From Paragordius varius (taxonomy: Eukaryota; Animalia; Nematomorpha): a stretch of 64,000 nt of DNA. The stretch covers positions 1,240,001 to 1,304,000 of the forward strand of contig OZ176051.1 of assembly GCA_964247055.1 (NCBI GenBank), written 5' to 3'. The position numbers and the translations under genes were made by a program. The first letter of the stretch is position 1, and each line of letters starts with the position of its first letter. Positions 7,570 to 17,500 of the stretch are shown piece after piece. A model generated the notes under the pieces. That model had not been told where the DNA came from, searched no databases, and saw nothing but the letters and a program-made list of their open reading frames with translations.

Positions 7570-8012
7570 ATTTTCATATAAATTTTTAAGCAAGGTTATA
7601 AGTCTTACTCCAAACTTTGCCACATATGTATTTCTGGTAGCGATTTATGCTACAGAATTGGATATTAAAATTGAATAATAAAAAAAGGATTGTAGTATTT
7701 AAAATGTGATGTTGGAGGATGTTTAATATAAGGCTGTCTGACAAGGTTAAGAATGAAACAATAAGAGAAAAATTAAATATTAAGAGTAACTTAATGGGAG
7801 GTATAATAAAAAGAAAGTTTACATACATAGGGCACATTTTATGAAGTACATCCCTTGAGAAGGATATAATTTTTGGGAAAGAAGGCAAATAGAAAAAAGG
7901 ACCAATGTCAAGTTGGTTCAACCTCAAAAGAAGAATTCTGGTAGATGAGGTGAATTAAAGGAAATAGCATAGGAAAGAGACAAGAGGGGGACCTAGGGAA
8001 TTACATATCTAC
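7570..8012 (+). mobile_element. Second RTE-clade LINE 3' fragment, opposite orientation
   Basis: Plus-strand translation reads DKVKNETIREKLNIK..IIKRKFTYIGHIL.STSLEKDIIFG; it is a diverged reverse complement of about 6685-7120. Confidence 0.75.
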
Positions 8013-8462
8013 CTTTGCGAATTCCAGTAAAAAGCAGCGTATAACAAATTTTTATGTTATATTTTGTTTACAATTCATCCATTATGTATTAAAAGGCTAC
8101 CGTAAATTTTAAAAGTGGAACCGAAATTAAAACATTTGACTAAAAAATAATAAAAATGTAACAGAAGAAAGAATTGACTTAGAATTAGAATAAAAACGGT
8201 TATTAATTCAATTTATACCCCGATGTTTTACTTTTATTCTGAAGGTATCTCCTGCGAATTAACGTTAGTTGTTCGATGATAGCTTTAATATAATTTGTCA
8301 TATATATATATATCCCGAAATATATATATTACGATTTATTTAAATAAATGCGCCAAAAATTTACAGAATTTTAATTTACTCAATTTCTTTCTTCCACGAA
8401 TGATTATTTTTAGCCATTCAATATCACATTATACTGAATCTCATAATAAAATGTGCATTATT

Positions 8463-10022
8463 TTAACCATCGTTTAGAAAATGATCGAAAATATTGCTTT
8501 TCCCTTTCCCGCGATCACCAGAAACGGAAGTCAGTTTGTTAAAAAAATCATGGAGTCTGGCATCGTTTGTGAAATGATCGCTTTTATAATGAAATGTCAT
8601 GTTTTCACATTTATAGTAACGATTTAGGGGGATGTATCGAAGATTGAGAATACTTCTAGCAACTATTCCGGTCCACATGACATCTTCGTTTTGTACGAGA
8701 GGAAACAATTGTGTTTGACTTTTAGCGTAGAAAAGGCGGGCAATGTTATGACTAAAAATGTAACCGAAACCCGAACAATACGGTGGATAAAATTTGGCTG
8801 AGAAAATGCTGTAATTCGCATAGTTTTTATTCTCAGGATCATGAATAACATCCATATTCTTCCATACGGAACAGTAAATGGTGGTATTTGAATGGGTGTA
8901 TCGCATTTCGCTGTAACCATTTGTCGGGATACCTAAATCTGTAGCTATTTCTTTTGTGTTTTCATCTTCTTTATCCGTATGTCGTTGTCGATATCCGGAA
9001 AAATGTGTATAGTAATGATCAAAGAAACTAATGTACGATAAAATGGTGTACAGGAAAATAGAATTTACACGAATGTCCGAATCAACTTTAAAGAATAGGA
9101 GTGTACTATCGGCTCTCTGTGGTTTGCAGTTCAGTGCTATCCATTTATACATGATTCCACTCTTTAAATACAAGTTTTGATAGGTGTCTGCAAAACTTGC
9201 CTGTACCAAATCCCCATACAGCAAGGATTCTATCCGCAATCTTGGGTGATAAATATTATAATTTTGGGAATAGCCAAGTATAAAAGCTACCTTAATATGT
9301 ATGTTTCTATTCCCATTTCTTAACACTGTTTTAACATAATTTGCAACTGAGATTGGAATACGATTCAAATGCCGTTTTTTGTTCCACACAGTATTCCGAA
9401 TAAATTTGGATGTTATGGTTTTGTTGGTCCATTTGGTGCGCATTTTGTTTCGATCACTAAAATCCTCAACTCTCGTAAAGATTAAAATAATAAGTCCAAC
9501 TGAATTGGAGGGAAATGTGCAAAAACTTGCGGATGGTTTTATCAAAAAATGACTCAAATTTTTAGGCAATATCGACATTAAGTTGCTTTCTGGTGGTGAT
9601 TCAGGAACGCCAATCGTAGTTAAATGTTGATTTTCGTTGCCTACCAAAGGGTTTGTGAACCTTACTATAATAAATTGATAGAAAAGAAGGGTGAGTCCCA
9701 TTAGAGAAAAAATCTTTGCCAAAGTATATTTAAGATTCATGAAGCTAGAACATATCGTTACTCCGTCTGGATAAAAAAGTGGTGAATTTGGCATCGGCAT
9801 AATGGTATTTTTTGGTTTCATTCCGCAGTTAAAATTTTTATTTCTTTTATTGGCATCATTATAATCCATTTCTTGCAGTCGTTGAGCCGTTTTATTACTT
9901 ATTTCAATTTTTGAGATCAATGGAACATGACACATATAATAGTTATTTGTTTTCTTATTATTAATAATGGCATATAATTTCGTTTTGTTAGCGGCTAAAC
10001 TTTGGTTTTCTTCACTTTCCAT
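8463..10022 (-). CDS. GT31 beta-1,3-galactosyltransferase-like type II membrane protein, intronless CDS
   Basis: 519-aa ORF with a hydrophobic anchor (IFSLMGLTLLFYQFIIV) and Galactosyl_T motifs: RNKMRTKW, DLVQASFADTYQNLYLKS, FFKVDSD (DxD), YPPYCSGFGYIFS, EDVMWTG. Confidence 0.9.
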   Translation of the reverse strand: MESEENQSLAANKTKLYAIINNKKTNNYYMCHVPLISKIEISNKTAQRLQEMDYNDANKRNKNFNCGMKPKNTIMPMPNSPLFYPDGVTICSSFMNLKYTLAKIFSLMGLTLLFYQFIIVRFTNPLVGNENQHLTTIGVPESPPESNLMSILPKNLSHFLIKPSASFCTFPSNSVGLIILIFTRVEDFSDRNKMRTKWTNKTITSKFIRNTVWNKKRHLNRIPISVANYVKTVLRNGNRNIHIKVAFILGYSQNYNIYHPRLRIESLLYGDLVQASFADTYQNLYLKSGIMYKWIALNCKPQRADSTLLFFKVDSDIRVNSIFLYTILSYISFFDHYYTHFSGYRQRHTDKEDENTKEIATDLGIPTNGYSEMRYTHSNTTIYCSVWKNMDVIHDPENKNYANYSIFSAKFYPPYCSGFGYIFSHNIARLFYAKSQTQLFPLVQNEDVMWTGIVARSILNLRYIPLNRYYKCENMTFHYKSDHFTNDARLHDFFNKLTSVSGDRGKGKSNIFDHFLNDG

Positions 10023-10510
10023 TCCGGAATAAAATATATCAGTGCGAGATGATAATTATTTTTATATCATACCTGGATATTTTTTTGCGCTAATAAACGC
10101 CCCCCGCCTTACGCCATATATAAATGTGAGCCTATTTATTACTATTTTAACATAAAAAAACACTTATTAGGATATAAGGAAGTTATCAATCGATTTAACA
10201 TATTATTCATTTTTATTATTAAATATAATGCATTTTGCTGACTCACCTTAGCAATTTCTAAGTCATCCGCCCATTGAATTAATTTATTCCATCAAAGCAC
10301 CTAAATATTCCTACTGCCTATAAAACCATTAGAATTTTTATTCATTCTACATTCAGGCGCAATATTATCATACATTAATAAATTTGTTGAATTTTGGATA
10401 TATAACAGATATTTATTATAAATAACATAATAATATTTACAAGATTAATAATATGCAGTGTAATTATAAAAAATAGTTTATCACAAATTTCAGTTGGACA
10501 AAATTATATG

Positions 10511-11392
10511 CTAAAATTCGCTACGTTCATTTTTGATATATGATAAAGTAGAATTATTGAGGTTTTTATGTGGAGGAAGTGTGTAAAGGTCCCAGGTATT
10601 AATGTAAACATAACGAGAAAATATAAGATATAAATATCTAAACCAAATTCGTTGACTGTGATGTTGATTAAAAGCTTTCCAAGTGCTTATAACACTTTTT
10701 GGATTACTATAAATTTTTAAACTGGCATTATGAATACCATCTGAACATACTAAACTTTGTAAGAGATCTATCAAAATATACAAGAATGATATATATTTTT
10801 GATATATGGAAACCGATCGTAAAACATATATATAAGGTTGATGTTTATAATCCAAAAAACGTTGAAACAATGTAGTTAGCTCAGGTAATGAATAATAAAT
10901 TGACCGATGATTTATATGGCCACTAATACCATACTCATCAAATGTAAAGATAGAAAAATTTGCAAAAGGATTTGTTCGATAACTGTTTAACAATTTAAAA
11001 GACATCAAAAGAGTGTCAAAAATTTGGCTGGCCACTTGATTTGAATCATAAGGCGTATCGGGCTGGTCAGTAAAATTTAAAATAGCTATATTGTCGGGAT
11101 TTATTCGATAGAAAAGCTGAGAAGAGTTATAAAGTTCCAATATTCTATCATTACCACGATGGTAAAAATTCCCATTGGTCAAACAGATAAGGTAAATAGA
11201 AAAATTTTTGTCACCAAAAAGATTATTGGAAAAATGGTAAAGGGTCGGTGAAAAGAATAAAATTTCGTCATCAGGATGGGCAAATATGAAAACTAGATTT
11301 TGACTTTTAATATCTTTCCATGGACGAAATTTATTATGAAAATATTTTAACAGCAAAACAACAAAAATTGGTAAAATTAAACTAATTTTCAT
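10511..11392 (-). CDS. PIGL: GlcNAc-PI de-N-acetylase (GPI anchor biosynthesis), intronless
   Basis: N-terminal TM (ISLILPIFVVLLLKYF), catalytic AHPDDE, LTNGN, FTFDEYGISGHINH, and C-terminal HHSQRIWFRYLYLIFSRYVYIN. ATG at 11392 is the only Met before AHPDD. Confidence 0.93.
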   Translation of the reverse strand: MKISLILPIFVVLLLKYFHNKFRPWKDIKSQNLVFIFAHPDDEILFFSPTLYHFSNNLFGDKNFSIYLICLTNGNFYHRGNDRILELYNSSQLFYRINPDNIAILNFTDQPDTPYDSNQVASQIFDTLLMSFKLLNSYRTNPFANFSIFTFDEYGISGHINHRSIYYSLPELTTLFQRFLDYKHQPYIYVLRSVSIYQKYISFLYILIDLLQSLVCSDGIHNASLKIYSNPKSVISTWKAFNQHHSQRIWFRYLYLIFSRYVYINTWDLYTLPPHKNLNNSTLSYIKNERSEF

Positions 11393-11909
11393 TTGAGGAT
11401 AATGAATTGTGAATAGTATTTGATAATGTTTGAGCTTCGGATAAGGCTAATCTCAACTCTTGAGCGGCTTCTTCGTTTTGCGTTTGTAAAACGTGAAAAA
11501 TTTTATTTGATTTATTAATATCGTTTGGGAGTTCGGAGGGAAGGTGTGATATAAGAGTAGATATATCTTTGACTTTTTTTGCAATTAGTTTGGAAAAAAG
11601 GGATGGATAATCAGAATCTTGATTTTCGGACAATTTTTCTTTTTCATCGGGAGATTTTATGTTTTTATTGGATGCATTATGGTTGTAATTTTCCAAGGCA
11701 ATATCTGCCGATAAAGTTCCGGAGCTTTTAAAATTTTGGTAAATATCTGTGGCCAATGCGGAATCAGGTTGAATATCAAGCAATTCACAATATTTTTGTT
11801 TTAGTTTAGAGGGTCCATCAACTTGTTGTTGTATAATCCCGATGGCATTGCACATATTTTCTGCTAGCTCGTTTATGGCATCTTGTAATTGCGTTATCAA
11901 ATCAGCCAT
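11382..11909 (-). CDS. MED21: Mediator subunit 21 (Srb7), intronless
   Basis: N-terminus MADLITQLQDAINELAENMCNAIGIIQQ; C-terminal half FSKLIAKKVKDISTLISHLPSE...LQTQNEEAAQEL. Both halves match the MED21 pattern. Confidence 0.92.
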   Translation of the reverse strand: MADLITQLQDAINELAENMCNAIGIIQQQVDGPSKLKQKYCELLDIQPDSALATDIYQNFKSSGTLSADIALENYNHNASNKNIKSPDEKEKLSENQDSDYPSLFSKLIAKKVKDISTLISHLPSELPNDINKSNKIFHVLQTQNEEAAQELRLALSEAQTLSNTIHNSLSSNEN

Positions 11910-11950
11910 GTACCATACAATATTTTCTTACACACATTAATCCATTAGAT

Positions 11951-14327
11951 ATGAATCGTAATATTGGCTTTGAAATATTTTTTGATTCCCAGAAGGATAA
12001 GTTATCGGATAAGAGCGATGTATTATTTCTTAAGCTTCATTGGCTCTTAATTCAAAGTGGATTTTTACTGTTTGATGAGAAAGTTAATGTTTAAGGTATA
12101 TTTTAGGCCAATTATTCTACCGAACTATTACCGAAAGATTGGCAAAACCTTTCAAAATTTACATATAAAAAAGATGATAATATTGTGCATCTTGATATTT
12201 CCAAAAAAGGGACAACGCTTATTTTTGATCTTAAAGTGCATTTTAATTAATTTTAGAGCAATAAATCAGGCAATTCTAAAACCATTCAATTAAATCCAGA
12301 TCAGTACATAGATGACGACTATAAAATATTTAAAAAGTTTTATAATTTAAATTTTAGGGCATATAAAAACCTTAATGAAGTGGATAAAGTATTTGATTGT
12401 CCCTTAGTTACTCATAACAGCGATAATCCTGATTCGGGAAACAACAATGCAGGCGAGAAAAAAGAAAATGTAAAACAAGATAATTTCAAATCATCTTACA
12501 ATGTTGACGAAAATGCCAAAAGTTTTAGGGATCACACACCCGGAACACGGTAAGAAATATAAAATACTGTAAAAATTAAATTTATAAGAAATAATAAAAT
12601 TATTAATATAAGGGATAAAAGGTCAAATATATTTTTACCAAAAACGGTTTTATTTTAATTTATGCATAATATGATAATAGAAATAACCACAAAATCATAA
12701 ACCAATAAACCAATCTATTATATACTTTCCTATGAAAAATCCAAGGAAATATTTTTATGCTTCAAATAAGATTGAATGCAAAAATATGTTAAAAATTAAA
12801 AAAATAAATATGTTTTAATTTAACCTTACTAAAACCATTTTAATGGTGGATAAACTATTTTCAACCTGTAATTCTGGTACGATTCTGATTCTAACCTTCA
12901 GATTTAATAATTGAAAATAAAAGATAATATATTTTTTACAGGGACCAAAACTTGGGTGGGGGGAGTTTTGGGGGTGGTGGGGGCCCTCTGGGCGGAGGAA
13001 GTAGTGGGCCGCCATCTGTCGGGCGAGGGGACATTTATCCAGGAAGCGGACAGAATTCTGACATGTTTTTTGATCCCATGCGGAACATGAGGTAAGAATA
13101 CACCTTTAAAAGTTTTAAAGTAAATGTAAAATAAAAGATTTTAAGAAGATTGTTTTATCAAGAGGTTTGTGCCTAATTGGCTGACTAAAAATAAGGTAAT
13201 ATTGCCAGAATTTGGTTGGTATTCTATTATAGCCGTTAAGTTACCGCCCTAATTTGCTATTTTTTTTCTTTCGTAGTTAATAGGTATTTTTTTTATAAAG
13301 ATTTGATAATCCAACGCTTATACACAAAGATATTATCTGTAACGTCAAAAGTTAATTTAAAAATAGGATAAGTATTTAGTATTTAACTGTTTTAATACAA
13401 ATTAAAATTTGATCAAATATAAAATTGTGTAAGGTAATGAGGTTTCTAACTTTATAGACGAATTTCCTGATTATGGCATAATATTTATAGACCCAATTAT
13501 TTTTTAGATTAAATATTGAATCATAAATGGTTTTTTATTACGATACCCCATGTATGTTAATTTTAGTATAGATACGTTAATTTACAGTGTGCGTAACTAT
13601 ACAATGCTGCTAATATTTGCAGAAAACATATATAGAAAAGATGATTATTATTAATGAATAACAAAAAAGCGACTTTATCTGAAACCTATTTTTACTCATA
13701 TTCTAAGTAGCTATGAAAAAGTGTTTTATTTTAAATTTTTTTCAAATAAAAAGACAACCATTCGTCCAAGACGACAACCATAGAAACCAAGGCGGTCAAC
13801 CATTTCCCCTGGGCGGCGGTCCTTTTAACCCAGATGGCGGATTATTTAGACCGGTTAATCCAAATGCTGGAATCCCAGAAAACTTACCACCTGGAGCCGT
13901 ACCTCCTGGGGCACGTTTTGACCCTTTTGGCCCATCTGTGCCACAAAAAGAGTACTTTTTTAGTTTTTAGTGATATGACATTATTCTATGCATTTGAAGG
14001 ACAATTTATTATAAAGGCAATATTTTTAAACTTTAATATAAGATATTAATGGATCTAAAAATAGAGTAGAATTCATTTATTTTATAATCGTAATGATTTA
14101 GTTTATAGAAAATATCAAGCTTTAAAAATTATGGCTGTCTTTTTAAAAAATATTTATCTAATTCCTACGTTTCTATATAATTTTTATTCTCTAATATGTG
14201 TTATATTATTTAATAAAACCAAGATTTTTATAAAAAAACCAAATTTATATATACATTGTTCTTATAATATTTTAGCCAAAGACCTGATATTCTAAGACCA
14301 CCTGGAAGCGATGATATGTACAGTTAA
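11951..14327 (+). CDS. PSMF1: Proteasome regulator PI31, 7 exons
   Basis: N-terminal GFEIFF...DVLFLKLHWLLIQSGF, LNPDQYID..AYKNLNE, VGRGDIYP, the signature LPPGAVPPGARFDPFGP and C-terminal PPGSDDMYS* (HbYX-like). First three introns: 12083-12106 (24 nt), 12236-12256 (21 nt), 12337-12358 (22 nt). Confidence 0.92.
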
Positions 14328-14506: not shown

Positions 14507-17500
14507 TTATTGAGTTGGAGGATATTGTTGTGTTTGTTGTTCTTCTGTTGGGGGGTAAGGGGCAGTTTCTGAGTAAGATTGTGGATAATTTGCTTCTTGA
14601 TTCGCTGGTGGGATCGTACCCGTTTCTGCATTATAATTCCAATTGGCAACTTCCTGGTTTGCTGAGTAAGATTGTGGATAATTTGCTTCTGCCGTTGATT
14701 GGTTATAATTCCAATTAACGGCTTCTTCCGGGTTGGTTTCTTGATTAAAAGTTTGCGTAAAATTTGCTTCTTGAGTCACTGGTGTGGGGGTTGTCACCTG
14801 TTCTGCGTTATAACTCAAATTAACTCCTTCTTGATTTGTCCCAATCTCTATGGGCGCTGCAATAGCTCCTCCACCAGTTTTATCATCGTAATAATAGTTT
14901 TCACCACCATACTCTGAATGAAATAAAACAGGGATAAAACATATAAAATAAAGTTATTATATCGTTTAGAAAAACATATTCTTAATAAATGAAAAGGCCC
15001 ATTAGAACGAAAATTGCCATAAGTTTTTGGTGCGCAATATGTATATATATCTTATAATTACTCTTATCATTACCGTTTTCAATGACAATGTTTTGGTTCA
15101 AGGGCACAGTTATGTTTTCGTAAGCGTAATCATTGTAATAATAGTCTTGATAAGTGTAGGCATCTTGATTGCCCGCAGTTGCTCCCTCACTGGTGGAACC
15201 TGCTTGGTCTGTTTTAGTTTCTGGCGTTGTTGAACCTTCTGTGGGTTTTTCATCCGTCTTAATTTTTTTGTGTCGTTTTTTTCGAATAATTTTCTTTATG
15301 ATAAACTCACCTAATACATTAAACCCTTTGTAAATATTGCCAATTTTATTTTTAAAATAAGATAAAAACTAAACCTGTCTCATCCCTCCCCAAAATAAAG
15401 ATAGATATGATTGAGCTTGTGATTAATCCGATAATGACTAAGGCACCCACGATTGATACGGCTTTGCGAGATGGTTGTTCCATTCCTATGTAATATTATT
15501 TCATATCATGATGGAGTAAATTTAATTTTACAATTCTACTGTATTTGAAATAGGCAAACGTAAACACATAAGGACAAATATTTTTTTATTCAAAAGATAA
15601 CGTACCTTTTAAAACTTTAATTTTTCTCACCCAAACTATTTTATTATAATTATAAATAGGTGATTGAGTGTGCTACCAGTTTACATCTCTATTCTTTATT
15701 TTGCGACCCAAAATGTTGAGTAAATAAGTATCAGGTTTTATACGTTTGTGTTATAAAAAAATATTTGTCTTTTAGTATTTACCTTTTGTCTGTCTGTATG
15801 ATTTTAATAATTAAGTTGTCGAAAACATCCATTAACTAATCAAATATTTCCAGATTAATAAAAATATGTTTAATTTTTTTCCTCTAATCTAATAAACATT
15901 TGGTAAATTGTATAGAATTCGATATTATTATAGATTTAGCCTAAGTATTATACTTATTTTGTGCAAATGTATATTTTAAAAAAGTAATTAATTTATCTAG
16001 ATGAATATTTTTAATAACTCTTCATTACATATTCAATTTTTTGTAAGTGATGACATTTTGGGGTAGTTTATAATCCAGATCTTAAAGAAGAAAGAAAATA
16101 CTGCCTTGAAAGTTGTTTTGATTAAAATTTAATTATTAAATACAAACTTTTAGGGTCCAAATTCGGATAGGCTGATTGAATCAAACAGCTGATATTTAAA
16201 TGAATAAATATAAATTAAAAGCTTTTCAAACTTAAAATTTTTGCCATAATATACATTTATTTGCATGTTATATTTGCGATAAAATTAAAAATAACGGCTA
16301 AAAGTTTGAGATGGGTATTTTACAATGTAATTTTTATTTTTTTGGAAAATAAAGGCTAAAGTAGGCATATTTTTTAATTTGGCTCAATGTTAAAAATTTA
16401 ATATATTTAAATTTCAAATGGCTTAATATAAACCTATATAAAATTTCTAAATTCGTTTAAAACATAAAAATTAAAATAAATTGAGGCTAGGAAAGCCATC
16501 CTCGCTTAAATAATTTTTACTAAGATAATTATATATTTTAAAAAATTATAGAAAATAAAAAGGCGCATATTTGGTTAAAGATTAATTTTGATATTTGGGT
16601 TAGAAATCTTATAAAAATAAAGTTTTATTTCCCGTCAATATTTAATATATTAATCTTATTACATAATCCTCCATCTAATTAATTAAATAATATAATATAA
16701 TTTGTATAATAAAAATATATGCCTTTGACTTGATTATTATAAATAATCTATGTTAAACATAACACTGAAAAAATATTTCCGTTTTTCTGCATATCGTTGC
16801 CAAAAATTGGAAAATTACTGTTTTGGTGTTAAAATTAAACAAAACTCTGGTTATAGCAAATAAATTACATTTATAAAAAAACTCAGCTTATCTCATTTTT
16901 AAATTAACATAATATAAAAATAAACCAATCATGATACGTAAAAATGGGTTATTGAAATATAAAATTATATTAACTTTGGAGGGTCCGAGTTACAAATTTA
17001 AGTGTTTGAGCCTGTCCTCGCCCCACTTTGTTTACACCAAGGATTGTGGCAATGTATTTCGTGGCAGGTTTTAATCCAGTTATATTTAAATTTTGCTGTT
17101 AAATATGATAAAAATAAAATTATTGTATATTAAAAATATTAGAAATTAAACTTTCTACCTCTTCATTTGATTGTTTTAATTTTTGTCGATTGGCGTTTTC
17201 CAAATCAAACCCATATTCGATTTCAAAAAAGTCTGCTCCTTCGGCTTTGAGAGTCCACTCTAAAAGGACGCTTGTATCTGCCACTTTTGCCTGAAAATTG
17301 GTAACTGCTTGAGGTACTTGTAGATCTGAATTTCCAATAATCATATTTTTTTTTATCTATTCATTTTTAAAAACCCTTTCGCTTTTTTGAAATTTATTAA
17401 ATTTACAGATTGAAAATATAATTTAACTTACAGTCACACGGAATCAATTCGACACTTTCGACGTTCATGGTTTTTAACATGTTGGGTATTGTTCCTTTCA

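What the first reader, a model, noticed from the sequence alone, without database searches (positions are those of the whole stretch)
10511..11909. MED21 and PIG-L overlap by 11 nt on the same strand: a candidate translationally coupled bicistron
MED21 ends ...TCA AAT GAA AAT TAG (stop 11384-11382). PIG-L starts ATG AAA ATT AGT at 11392, 8 nt before that stop, in another frame (shared ATGAAAATTAG). Both ORFs look complete and both are intronless. The PIG-L ATG is the only Met before its TM anchor and AHPDD motif, so it cannot start further downstream. There is no room for a PIG-L promoter or MED21 3' UTR outside the partner CDS. Established knowledge: stop-start overlaps drive coupling in bacteria and termination-reinitiation in caliciviruses, and a GPI-pathway bicistron exists in human (PYURF/PIGY). 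I know of no MED21-PIGL bicistron. Inference: PIG-L is made by reinitiation, by trans-splicing inside the MED21 CDS (an AG in GATTAG lies about 55 nt upstream), or from an internal promoter.
Basis: partly seen in the sequence, partly recalled or inferred. Interest (0 to 1): 0.85.

Follow-up and report, generated by a model that had tools for sequence, protein, structure and literature searches.

The report
MED21 and PIG-L genes overlap
In a horsehair-worm genome two unrelated housekeeping genes (Mediator subunit MED21 and the GPI-anchor enzyme PIG-L) really do overlap by 11 bases on one strand; a distant horsehair worm has the same gene pair joined at the same spot, so they behave as one linked unit, but how the second protein is made still needs RNA data.

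Summary
Observation confirmed. ORF 11382-11909(-) is a complete MED21 and ORF 10511-11392(-) a complete PIG-L. They share the 11 nt ATGAAAATTAG in different frames.

The window is from a nematomorph (CHSY best hit Gordionus, 43% identity). Gordionus has the same order, PI31 <> MED21 > PIG-L. Its MED21 ends with the same NEN-stop. RefSeq isoform X2 of its PIG-L starts 9 nt after that stop, then crosses a 5,055-nt intron. So the linkage is old, and the window looks like an intron-less, collapsed version. An assembly indel is unlikely.

Mechanism is inferred; no RNA run was available.
- No TURBS motif and no RNA structure at the junction.
- Leaky scanning from the MED21 cap meets six AUGs.
- The last 255 nt of MED21 before the PIG-L AUG have no AUG in any frame. 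All three sites there that could form ATG use the rare C-ending codon (P about 0.02).

I favour (about 45%) a PIG-L RNA whose 5' end lies inside MED21, read by ordinary scanning. Termination-reinitiation gets about 20%, a leaky-scanning/uORF chain about 12%, and SL trans-splicing about 10%.

First-stage notes list more tight same-strand pairs elsewhere in this genome. I did not check them.

The parts
11382..11909 (-). MED21 CDS, 175 aa, no intron, stop TAG at 11384-11382
   Evidence: Pfam Med21, 2.7e-18. 43% identity over the full length to Gordionus MED21, with the same C-terminus NEN*.
10511..11392 (-). PIG-L CDS (GlcNAc-PI de-N-acetylase), 293 aa, no intron. It has an N-terminal membrane anchor, AHPDDE and HxxH motifs.
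   Evidence: Pfam PIG-L, 3.5e-11. 36% identity, E 2e-39, to Gordionus PIG-L P0078. 1,875 homologues.
11382..11392 (-). The 11-nt overlap ATGAAAATTAG. The PIG-L start codon is made by the MED21 Asn-Glu codons AAT GAA.
   Evidence: The same ATG exists in Gordionus, where it opens only a 7-codon ORF.
11393..11644 (-). AUG-free stretch: the last part of the MED21 CDS has no ATG in any frame. Candidate 5' leader of PIG-L.
   Evidence: last ATG at 11647. (inter-ATG gaps of 255 nt or more are 1.1-1.5% of gaps; none occurs in 5 other ORFs). (expected 2.2 ATG, P(0)=0.02).
11468..11525 (-). Three codon pairs that avoid ATG by using the rare C-ending codon: AAC GAT (11525), CAC GTT (11495), AAC GAA (11477).
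   Evidence: the background is 71 of 87 T-ending before a G-starting codon. Coordinates.
11654..11669 (-). A-rich TATA-like element AATAAAAACATAAAAT in the non-conserved MED21 linker, just upstream of the AUG-free stretch. This is inference only.
   Evidence: for coordinates. It resembles the TATAAAAATAA element about 60 nt before the GalT ATG. Not significant on its own in 28% GC DNA.
11330..11335 (-). AATAAA 47 nt after the MED21 stop, inside PIG-L codons 20-21. Candidate MED21 poly(A) signal (inference).
   Evidence: The chance of one such hexamer within 100 nt is about 0.2.
10412..10417 (-). AATAAA 94 nt after the PIG-L stop. Candidate poly(A) signal of PIG-L or of the whole unit.
11435..11448 (-). 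The two AGs nearest upstream of the PIG-L ATG (ends at 11447 and 11435). These are the only possible trans-splice acceptors close to the start.
   Evidence: Neither has the TTTTAG form of the cis-acceptors seen in PI31.
11910..11950 (.). 41-nt spacer between the divergent start codons of MED21 and the PI31-like gene.
   Evidence: In Gordionus the same two genes are about 2.2 kb apart.

Best explanation
MED21 and PIG-L form an old, nematomorph-specific tandem unit. In this species it has collapsed until the two CDSs overlap, so PIG-L has no intergenic promoter or leader. The most likely mechanism is that PIG-L is translated by ordinary 40S scanning from an RNA whose 5' end lies inside the MED21 CDS, somewhere between about 11644 and 11526. 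I think this end most probably comes from an internal promoter in the poorly conserved MED21 linker. On that RNA the AUG-free last part of MED21 serves as the 5' leader, and the AAT-GAA-derived ATG at 11392 is the first AUG met. MED21 mRNA would either end at a poly(A) signal inside the PIG-L CDS (AATAAA at 11335) or run on to the PIG-L 3' end. Shown here: the overlap, the completeness of both genes, the conserved gene order and junction in Gordionus, the AUG-free stretch and its codon bias. Inferred: the position and origin of the 5' end, and the poly(A) choice.
For: Geometry. AUG distribution: six AUGs lie between the MED21 AUG and 11647, then none for 255 nt up to the PIG-L AUG. Gaps that long are 1.1-1.5% of inter-ATG gaps in the window and occur in none of 4,686 positions of five other ORFs. 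Codon choice: all three Asn/His codons followed by a G-starting codon in that stretch are the rare C-ending ones, against 82% T-ending in the background. Resampling synonymous codons gives 2.2 expected ATGs and P(0)=0.02, while the first half of MED21 is ordinary (6 observed, 5.5 expected). The sharp boundary in mid-gene suggests a leader that begins there rather than at the MED21 cap. Start context: PIG-L has A at -3. Local compaction shows that signals must sit inside neighbouring genes here: 41 nt between the divergent PI31 and MED21 ATGs, against about 2.2 kb in Gordionus. A promoter embedded in MED21 would also explain why the gene order is kept in Gordionus.
Against: There is no RNA evidence at all; the runs laid are DNA. 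P=0.02 is post hoc and comes from one locus. Gordionus MED21 exon 2 has 9 ATGs and no such desert, so the feature is not conserved. The Gordionus X2 junction is more simply read as MED21 read-through than as an internal start. The TATA-like element is not significant in AT-rich DNA. First-stage notes report several stop/start overlaps and 1-2-nt spacings elsewhere in this genome (unchecked). If real, they point to a common mechanism in which the stop-start distance itself matters.
Confidence: 0.45

Rival explanations
1. True bicistronic mRNA with translational coupling. Ribosomes finish MED21 at the TAG (11384-11382), the 40S stays on the RNA, moves back 8 nt and restarts at AUG 11392.
For: The stop and start overlap by 11 nt. 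The PIG-L AUG is the only AUG within 255 nt upstream and about 60 nt downstream of the stop. In the mature Gordionus X2 RNA the PIG-L AUG would lie 9 nt after the MED21 stop, so closeness of stop and start is conserved. The junction is unstructured (z +0.49). PIG-L is needed in small amounts (established knowledge). First-stage notes list other TAATG or 1-2-nt pairs with short upstream ORFs in this genome (unchecked).
Against: The upstream ORF is 175 codons, and reinitiation after long ORFs is normally very poor without a tethering element (established knowledge; reviews listed: PMC10275272, PMC5972666). No UGGGA motif lies within 150 nt. This model does not predict the AUG-free, codon-biased stretch, because translating ribosomes ignore internal AUGs.
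Confidence: 0.2
2. Bicistronic mRNA read by leaky scanning plus serial reinitiation. Some 40S subunits skip the weak MED21 AUG, translate very short out-of-frame uORFs in the first half of MED21, then scan the AUG-free 255 nt to the PIG-L AUG.
For: The MED21 AUG has a pyrimidine at -3 in both species (T in the window; C in Gordionus). PIG-L, PI31 and GalT have a purine there. All five out-of-frame AUGs open ORFs of 2-20 codons that end by 11585. The AUG-free stretch fits.
Against: An in-frame AUG in good context (Met19, 11855) and five uORFs must be passed, so the yield would be low. Selection has not cleared the first half of AUGs (6 observed, 5.5 expected). Gordionus has 9 ATGs in exon 2 alone.
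Confidence: 0.12
3. An operon resolved by spliced-leader trans-splicing. A polycistronic pre-mRNA is cut at an acceptor inside the MED21 CDS to give a capped PIG-L mRNA, so each precursor yields either MED21 or PIG-L. This would be like the SL1-type operons of C. elegans.
For: Nematomorphs are the sister phylum of nematodes, which use SL operons (established knowledge). Co-transcription is implied by Gordionus X2. In Gordionus a strong acceptor-like site (T-run followed by cattatAG) lies 12 nt before the isoform X1 ATG. The gene classes noted in other tight pairs are housekeeping genes, as in known operons (unchecked).
Against: The two AGs nearest the ATG (-42, -55) lack the TTTTAG form of this genome's acceptors. 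The AUG-free stretch reaches much further upstream than such a site would need. Rfam finds no SL RNA in the window, which is weak evidence because only 64 kb were searched. No paper in the library links nematomorphs with spliced leaders.
Confidence: 0.1
4. Artefact or decay: an assembly indel in the A-run, or one of the two genes is a dying copy.
For: One A fewer in ATGAAAATTAG would fuse the two frames. The contigs shown do not explicitly bridge 11382-11392.
Against: The MED21 end NEN-stop is identical in Gordionus. Both ORFs are intact, with catalytic motifs. Four DNA runs from two species labels cover the bin with no listed indel. The only indel listed in PIG-L is an in-frame TTG insertion at 10971, as expected of a gene under selection.
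Confidence: 0.03

Closest known systems
Gordionus sp. m RMFG-2023 MED21 / PIG-L locus (OX940783.2, locus L006)
   Same: It has the same order and orientation, PI31 <> MED21 > PIG-L, and the same MED21 C-terminus. The PIG-L isoform X2 start codon lies 9 nt after the MED21 stop.
   Different: There is no CDS overlap. A 5,055-nt intron follows a 7-nt coding mini-exon, and MED21 has a 42-nt intron. A second isoform (X1) starts 5 kb downstream. MED21 exon 2 is not AUG-free.
Human PYURF/PIGY bicistronic mRNA (recalled from the literature, not read here)
   Same: A GPI-pathway protein is encoded downstream of an unrelated small protein in one transcription unit.
   Different: It is a different GPI gene (PIG-Y, step 1, against PIG-L, step 2) with a different upstream partner. 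The ORFs do not overlap in this way, and a bicistronic mature mRNA is not shown here.
Termination-reinitiation of caliciviruses and influenza B (TURBS)
   Same: Stop and restart codons overlap or lie a few nt apart.
   Different: The defining UGGGA motif is absent. This is a cellular gene pair and no dependence on termination is shown.
C. elegans SL1-type operons and tunicate operons without an intercistronic region
   Same: Same-strand housekeeping genes have no spacer, and 3' end formation of gene 1 would compete with 5' end formation of gene 2.
   Different: In those operons the CDSs do not overlap and an acceptor precedes the downstream AUG. No SL is known or testable here.
Overlapping transcription units in compacted eukaryotic genomes (microsporidia, nucleomorphs)
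   Same: Promoters, leaders and 3' ends lie inside neighbouring genes, and intergenic spacers are extremely short.
   Different: This is an animal genome that is not compact overall: only 13 ORFs of 120 aa or more in 64 kb. The compaction is local.

Membership tests
Med21 (PF11221) and PIG-L (PF02585) protein families | Profile match above the gathering score over the whole domain; for PIG-L also the AHPDDE and HxxH motifs | tested here: met
   (67.1 bits against a cutoff of 37.3; 44.1 against 28.2). Motifs are aligned with the Gordionus orthologue.
TURBS-type termination-reinitiation | Stop and restart codon overlapping or within a few nt | tested here: met
   The AUG at 11392 lies 8 nt before the TAG at 11384-11382.
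TURBS-type termination-reinitiation | UGGGA motif complementary to 18S rRNA helix 26 in the approximately 90 nt upstream | tested here: not met
   No TGGGA, GGGA or TGGG within 150 nt upstream. No stable structure either (z +0.49).
TURBS-type termination-reinitiation | Downstream translation depends on termination of the upstream ORF | not testable with these tools
   Needs reporters or ribosome profiling.
SL trans-spliced operon | A spliced leader on the downstream mRNA and an SL RNA gene in the genome | not testable with these tools
   No RNA run was available. Rfam finds nothing in the 64-kb window. Nothing in the literature library.
SL trans-spliced operon | A 3' splice acceptor upstream of the downstream AUG and after the 3' end signal of the upstream gene | tested here: not met
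   The nearest AGs (11435, 11447) lie inside the MED21 CDS and lack the TTTTAG form. The first AATAAA is downstream of the PIG-L AUG.
Leaky-scanning bicistronic mRNA | No AUG between the cap and the downstream start other than a weak upstream start | tested here: not met
   The MED21 AUG is weak (T at -3), but six further AUGs follow, one of them in frame. Only the last 255 nt are AUG-free.
Overlapping monocistronic units (internal promoter) | An AUG-free leader in front of the downstream start, inside the upstream gene | tested here: met
   255 nt without ATG, with P(0)=0.02 given the protein sequence.
Overlapping monocistronic units (internal promoter) | A capped 5' end inside the upstream CDS | not testable with these tools
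   Needs CAGE, 5' RACE or long-read cDNA.
Conserved co-transcription unit | Same order, strand and tight junction in a distant relative, with a transcript-level link | tested here: met
   Gordionus L006. The X2 CDS (10001-10007 plus 15063-16072) translates exactly to RefSeq protein P0078. That X2 rests on RNA-seq is my inference from how RefSeq isoforms are built.

The most novel reading that the evidence does not exclude
Horsehair worms keep a class of true bicistronic (operon-like) nuclear mRNAs for housekeeping genes. MED21-PIG-L would be one such unit, conserved since this lineage split from Gordionus, with PIG-L translated from the same mature RNA as MED21 by reinitiation close to the MED21 stop codon. 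If general, this would be a cap-proximal-independent way of expressing full-length second cistrons in an animal. It would also bear on whether operon-type gene expression predates the split between nematodes and nematomorphs.
Probability: 0.25. Interest if true: 0.85.

Novelty: new member of a known kind. Interest (0 to 1): 0.6.

Why it matters
Same-strand overlaps between two conserved, complete protein-coding genes are rare in animal nuclear genomes. Here the junction is conserved in spirit across two deeply diverged nematomorphs. Part of the MED21 coding sequence also seems to be shaped by a second job, staying AUG-free as the leader of PIG-L. The locus is a compact, easily tested case for how animals express genes that have lost all intergenic space. 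If the other tight pairs noted in this genome hold up, it is also an entry point to asking whether the sister phylum of nematodes has operon-like or bicistronic expression. No paper in the searched library addresses that question.

Tried and rejected
- RNA evidence: the look-up of sequencing runs gave no RNA holder. The four runs laid (701 letters, within the operators' limit) are DNA contigs with even depth over genes and spacers and two haplotypes, so they say nothing about transcripts. That used the only read-laying run.
- Exact-protein look-ups: the window's MED21 and PIG-L and Gordionus X2 found nothing, so no transcriptome contig could be recovered.
- PIG-L relatives P0005, P0006, P0007 and P0077 and the MED21 relative P0068 come from unrelated organisms. 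None has MED21 next to PIG-L.
- A hidden tiny intron that would remove the overlap: rejected. No GT lies in the 50 nt before the ...AAAATTAG, and both protein ends are confirmed by homology.
- A MED21-PIG-L fusion by frameshift: rejected as implausible, since it would join a nuclear protein to an N-terminal ER anchor and there is no slippery site.
- An Rfam scan of the window found nothing.
- Literature searches for nematomorph trans-splicing or operons found nothing.

Full report
**What is there.** On the minus strand, ORF 11909..11382 (175 aa) ends ...TCA AAT GAA AAT TAG. ORF 11392..10511 (293 aa) begins ATG AAA ATT AGT. The two share 11 nt in different frames.
- Pfam calls the first Med21 (E 2.7e-18, residues 1-171 on profile positions 1-140 of 144).
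- Pfam calls the second PIG-L (E 3.5e-11, from residue 34), preceded by a hydrophobic anchor and the AHPDDE motif.
- The ATG at 11392 is the first start codon after the upstream in-frame stop, and the next in-frame Met lies beyond the catalytic motif.
- A beta-1,3-galactosyltransferase ORF follows on the same strand after a normal 488-nt spacer (8463-10022).

**Whose genome.** The window has 23-33% GC and carries animal genes: chondroitin synthase, ADAMTS and bHLH.
- The chondroitin synthase ORF hits Gordionus sp. m RMFG-2023 (Nematomorpha) at 43% identity, E 4e-140. The next hit scores 4.6e-66.
- The published Gordionus assembly has 26.9% GC (10.1101/2023.06.26.546503).
- I take the window to be from a horsehair worm other than Gordionus.
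- The neighbouring PI31-like gene has introns of 24 and 21 nt, of the form GT...TTTTAG.

**Not an artefact.**
- The window MED21 aligns end to end with Gordionus MED21 (43% identity). Both end in Asn-Glu-Asn-stop, AAT GAA AAT TAG against AAT GAA AAC TAG.
- The window PIG-L aligns with Gordionus PIG-L at 36% identity (E 2e-39), including AHPDDE and HxxH.
- Four public DNA runs under two species labels cover the junction bin. None of the best-supported indels shown lies in the overlap.
- The only indel listed inside PIG-L is an in-frame TTG insertion. Twenty-one weaker indels were not shown, so a check against raw reads is still worthwhile.

**The key comparative result.** An exhaustive search with PIG-L and a cluster look-up found the Gordionus orthologue. 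Its locus (L006) has the same arrangement: PI31 on the opposite strand, then MED21 (9353-9991, one 42-nt intron), then PIG-L. tblastx confirms colinearity of all three genes.
- RefSeq isoform X2 of Gordionus PIG-L starts with ATGATTG at 10001-10007, 9 nt after the MED21 stop.
- It uses the donor G|GTAGGT, skips 5,055 nt, and joins the main exon at 15063.
- This reconstruction translates exactly to the deposited protein.
- The main exon has no in-frame ATG before AHPDDE, so PIG-L there needs an upstream exon.
- Isoform X1 uses a different small exon 5 kb downstream, itself preceded by a strong acceptor-like site.

So an RNA that starts at or before the MED21 stop codon runs into PIG-L in Gordionus. 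That X2 rests on RNA-seq is my inference from how RefSeq alternative isoforms are made. The window looks like an intron-less, collapsed version of that unit:
- The MED21 intron and the 5-kb intron are absent.
- The PI31-MED21 spacer is 41 nt instead of about 2.2 kb.
- The PIG-L start has moved 17 nt upstream onto the ATG that the MED21 codons AAT GAA create. The same ATG exists in Gordionus but opens only a 7-codon ORF.

**Tests of mechanism on the sequence.**
1. *Coupling at the stop.* No UGGGA-type motif lies within 150 nt upstream. The junction RNA is no more structured than shuffles (z +0.49). The upstream ORF is 175 codons.
2. *Leaky scanning from the MED21 cap.* The MED21 AUG is in a weak context (T at -3; C in Gordionus). 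Six further AUGs follow, one of them in frame.
3. *AUG distribution.* All six of those AUGs lie in the first 262 nt. From 11644 to the PIG-L AUG there is no ATG in any frame for 255 nt.
   - Inter-ATG gaps that long are 1.1-1.5% of gaps in the window. They occur in none of 4,686 positions of five other ORFs.
   - The three places in this stretch where Asn or His is followed by a G-starting codon all use the rare C-ending codon (AAC GAT, CAC GTT, AAC GAA). The background is 71 of 87 T-ending.
   - Resampling synonymous codons for the same protein gives 2.2 expected ATGs and P(0)=0.02. The first half of MED21 is ordinary (6 observed, 5.5 expected).
   - Translating ribosomes ignore internal AUGs and scanning subunits do not. 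This pattern therefore favours a model in which the 3' half of the MED21 CDS is scanned as the PIG-L leader.
   - The sharp mid-gene boundary favours a 5' end there rather than at the MED21 cap.
   - This is post hoc evidence from one locus, and Gordionus exon 2 shows no such depletion (9 ATGs).
4. *Trans-splicing.* The nearest AGs upstream of the ATG end at 11435 and 11447. Neither looks like this genome's TTTTAG acceptors. Whether nematomorphs have a spliced leader could not be tested.
5. *3' ends.* AATAAA lies 47 nt after the MED21 stop, inside PIG-L, and again 94 nt after the PIG-L stop. Neither is significant by itself.

**Context.** The same window has a divergent pair with 41 nt between start codons. 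By a first-stage note, it also has a convergent pair with stops 7 nt apart. First-stage notes elsewhere in this genome list further tight same-strand pairs:
- PFDN1/TMEM199 and C19orf53/GatC, each with a TAATG overlap;
- COX17/DPH3, 1 nt apart;
- ANAPC16/RCL1, 2 nt apart;
- SMIM12/TRNT1, overlapping.

I could not check these. If they are real, with mostly short upstream ORFs, they raise the odds of a general bicistronic mechanism. They are the main reason I keep the coupling models alive.

**What could not be done.** No RNA run holds the stretch. Reads were laid on DNA runs. Exact-protein look-ups found no transcriptome contigs. The searched literature has nothing on spliced leaders or operons in nematomorphs.

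**Verdict.** Mechanism ranking:
- An internal 5' end with ordinary scanning through an AUG-free stretch of MED21: about 0.45.
- Termination-reinitiation at the MED21 stop: about 0.20.
- Leaky scanning with a uORF chain on a bicistron: about 0.12.
- SL trans-splicing: about 0.10.
- Artefact or decay: about 0.03.

The remainder is unassigned. One long-read cDNA or CAGE experiment would settle it.

Noticed in passing
window 12083-12106 and 12236-12256 (+): The PI31-like gene has two tiny introns of 24 and 21 nt (GT...TTTTAG), both multiples of three. Removing them restores one ORF. Exon 1 weakly matches PI31_Prot_N (E 0.065), and the gene is syntenic with Gordionus PI31.
   Followed up: partly
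window 11910-11950: Only 41 nt separate the divergent ATGs of MED21 and PI31, against about 2.2 kb between the same genes in Gordionus. Both promoters or leaders must overlap the partner gene. An acceptor-like site (pyrimidine-rich stretch ending ...CCATTAG) ends 2 nt before the PI31 ATG.
   Followed up: partly
L006 9981-10007 (Gordionus): A chain of overlapping small frames. An ATG 8 nt before the MED21 stop opens a 7-codon ORF, and that ORF's TGA overlaps the PIG-L X2 ATG in an ATGA arrangement. This may be chance.
   Followed up: no
L006 14940-15063 (Gordionus): The first coding exon of PIG-L isoform X1 (about 46 nt) is preceded, 12 nt before its ATG, by a T-run plus AG that looks like a strong 3' splice site. 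It is followed by an intron of about 40 nt. It may be an internal cassette exon or a trans-splice site rather than a first exon.
   Followed up: no
window 10023-10110 (-): The GalT gene has a canonical-looking TATAAAAATAA element about 60 nt before its ATG and an AUG-free stretch after it. This suggests short leaders (about 30 nt) in this genome.
   Followed up: no
window 7800-13500: Public DNA runs show two haplotypes at roughly equal depth and many SNPs. A second species label holds 43% of the sampled words. The listed indels fall in spacers, apart from one in-frame TTG insertion in PIG-L at 10971.
   Followed up: partly
window 1-64000: Only 13 ORFs of 120 aa or more occur in 64 kb. The genome is therefore not compact overall; housekeeping genes sit in very tight islands within long AT-rich DNA.
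   Followed up: no
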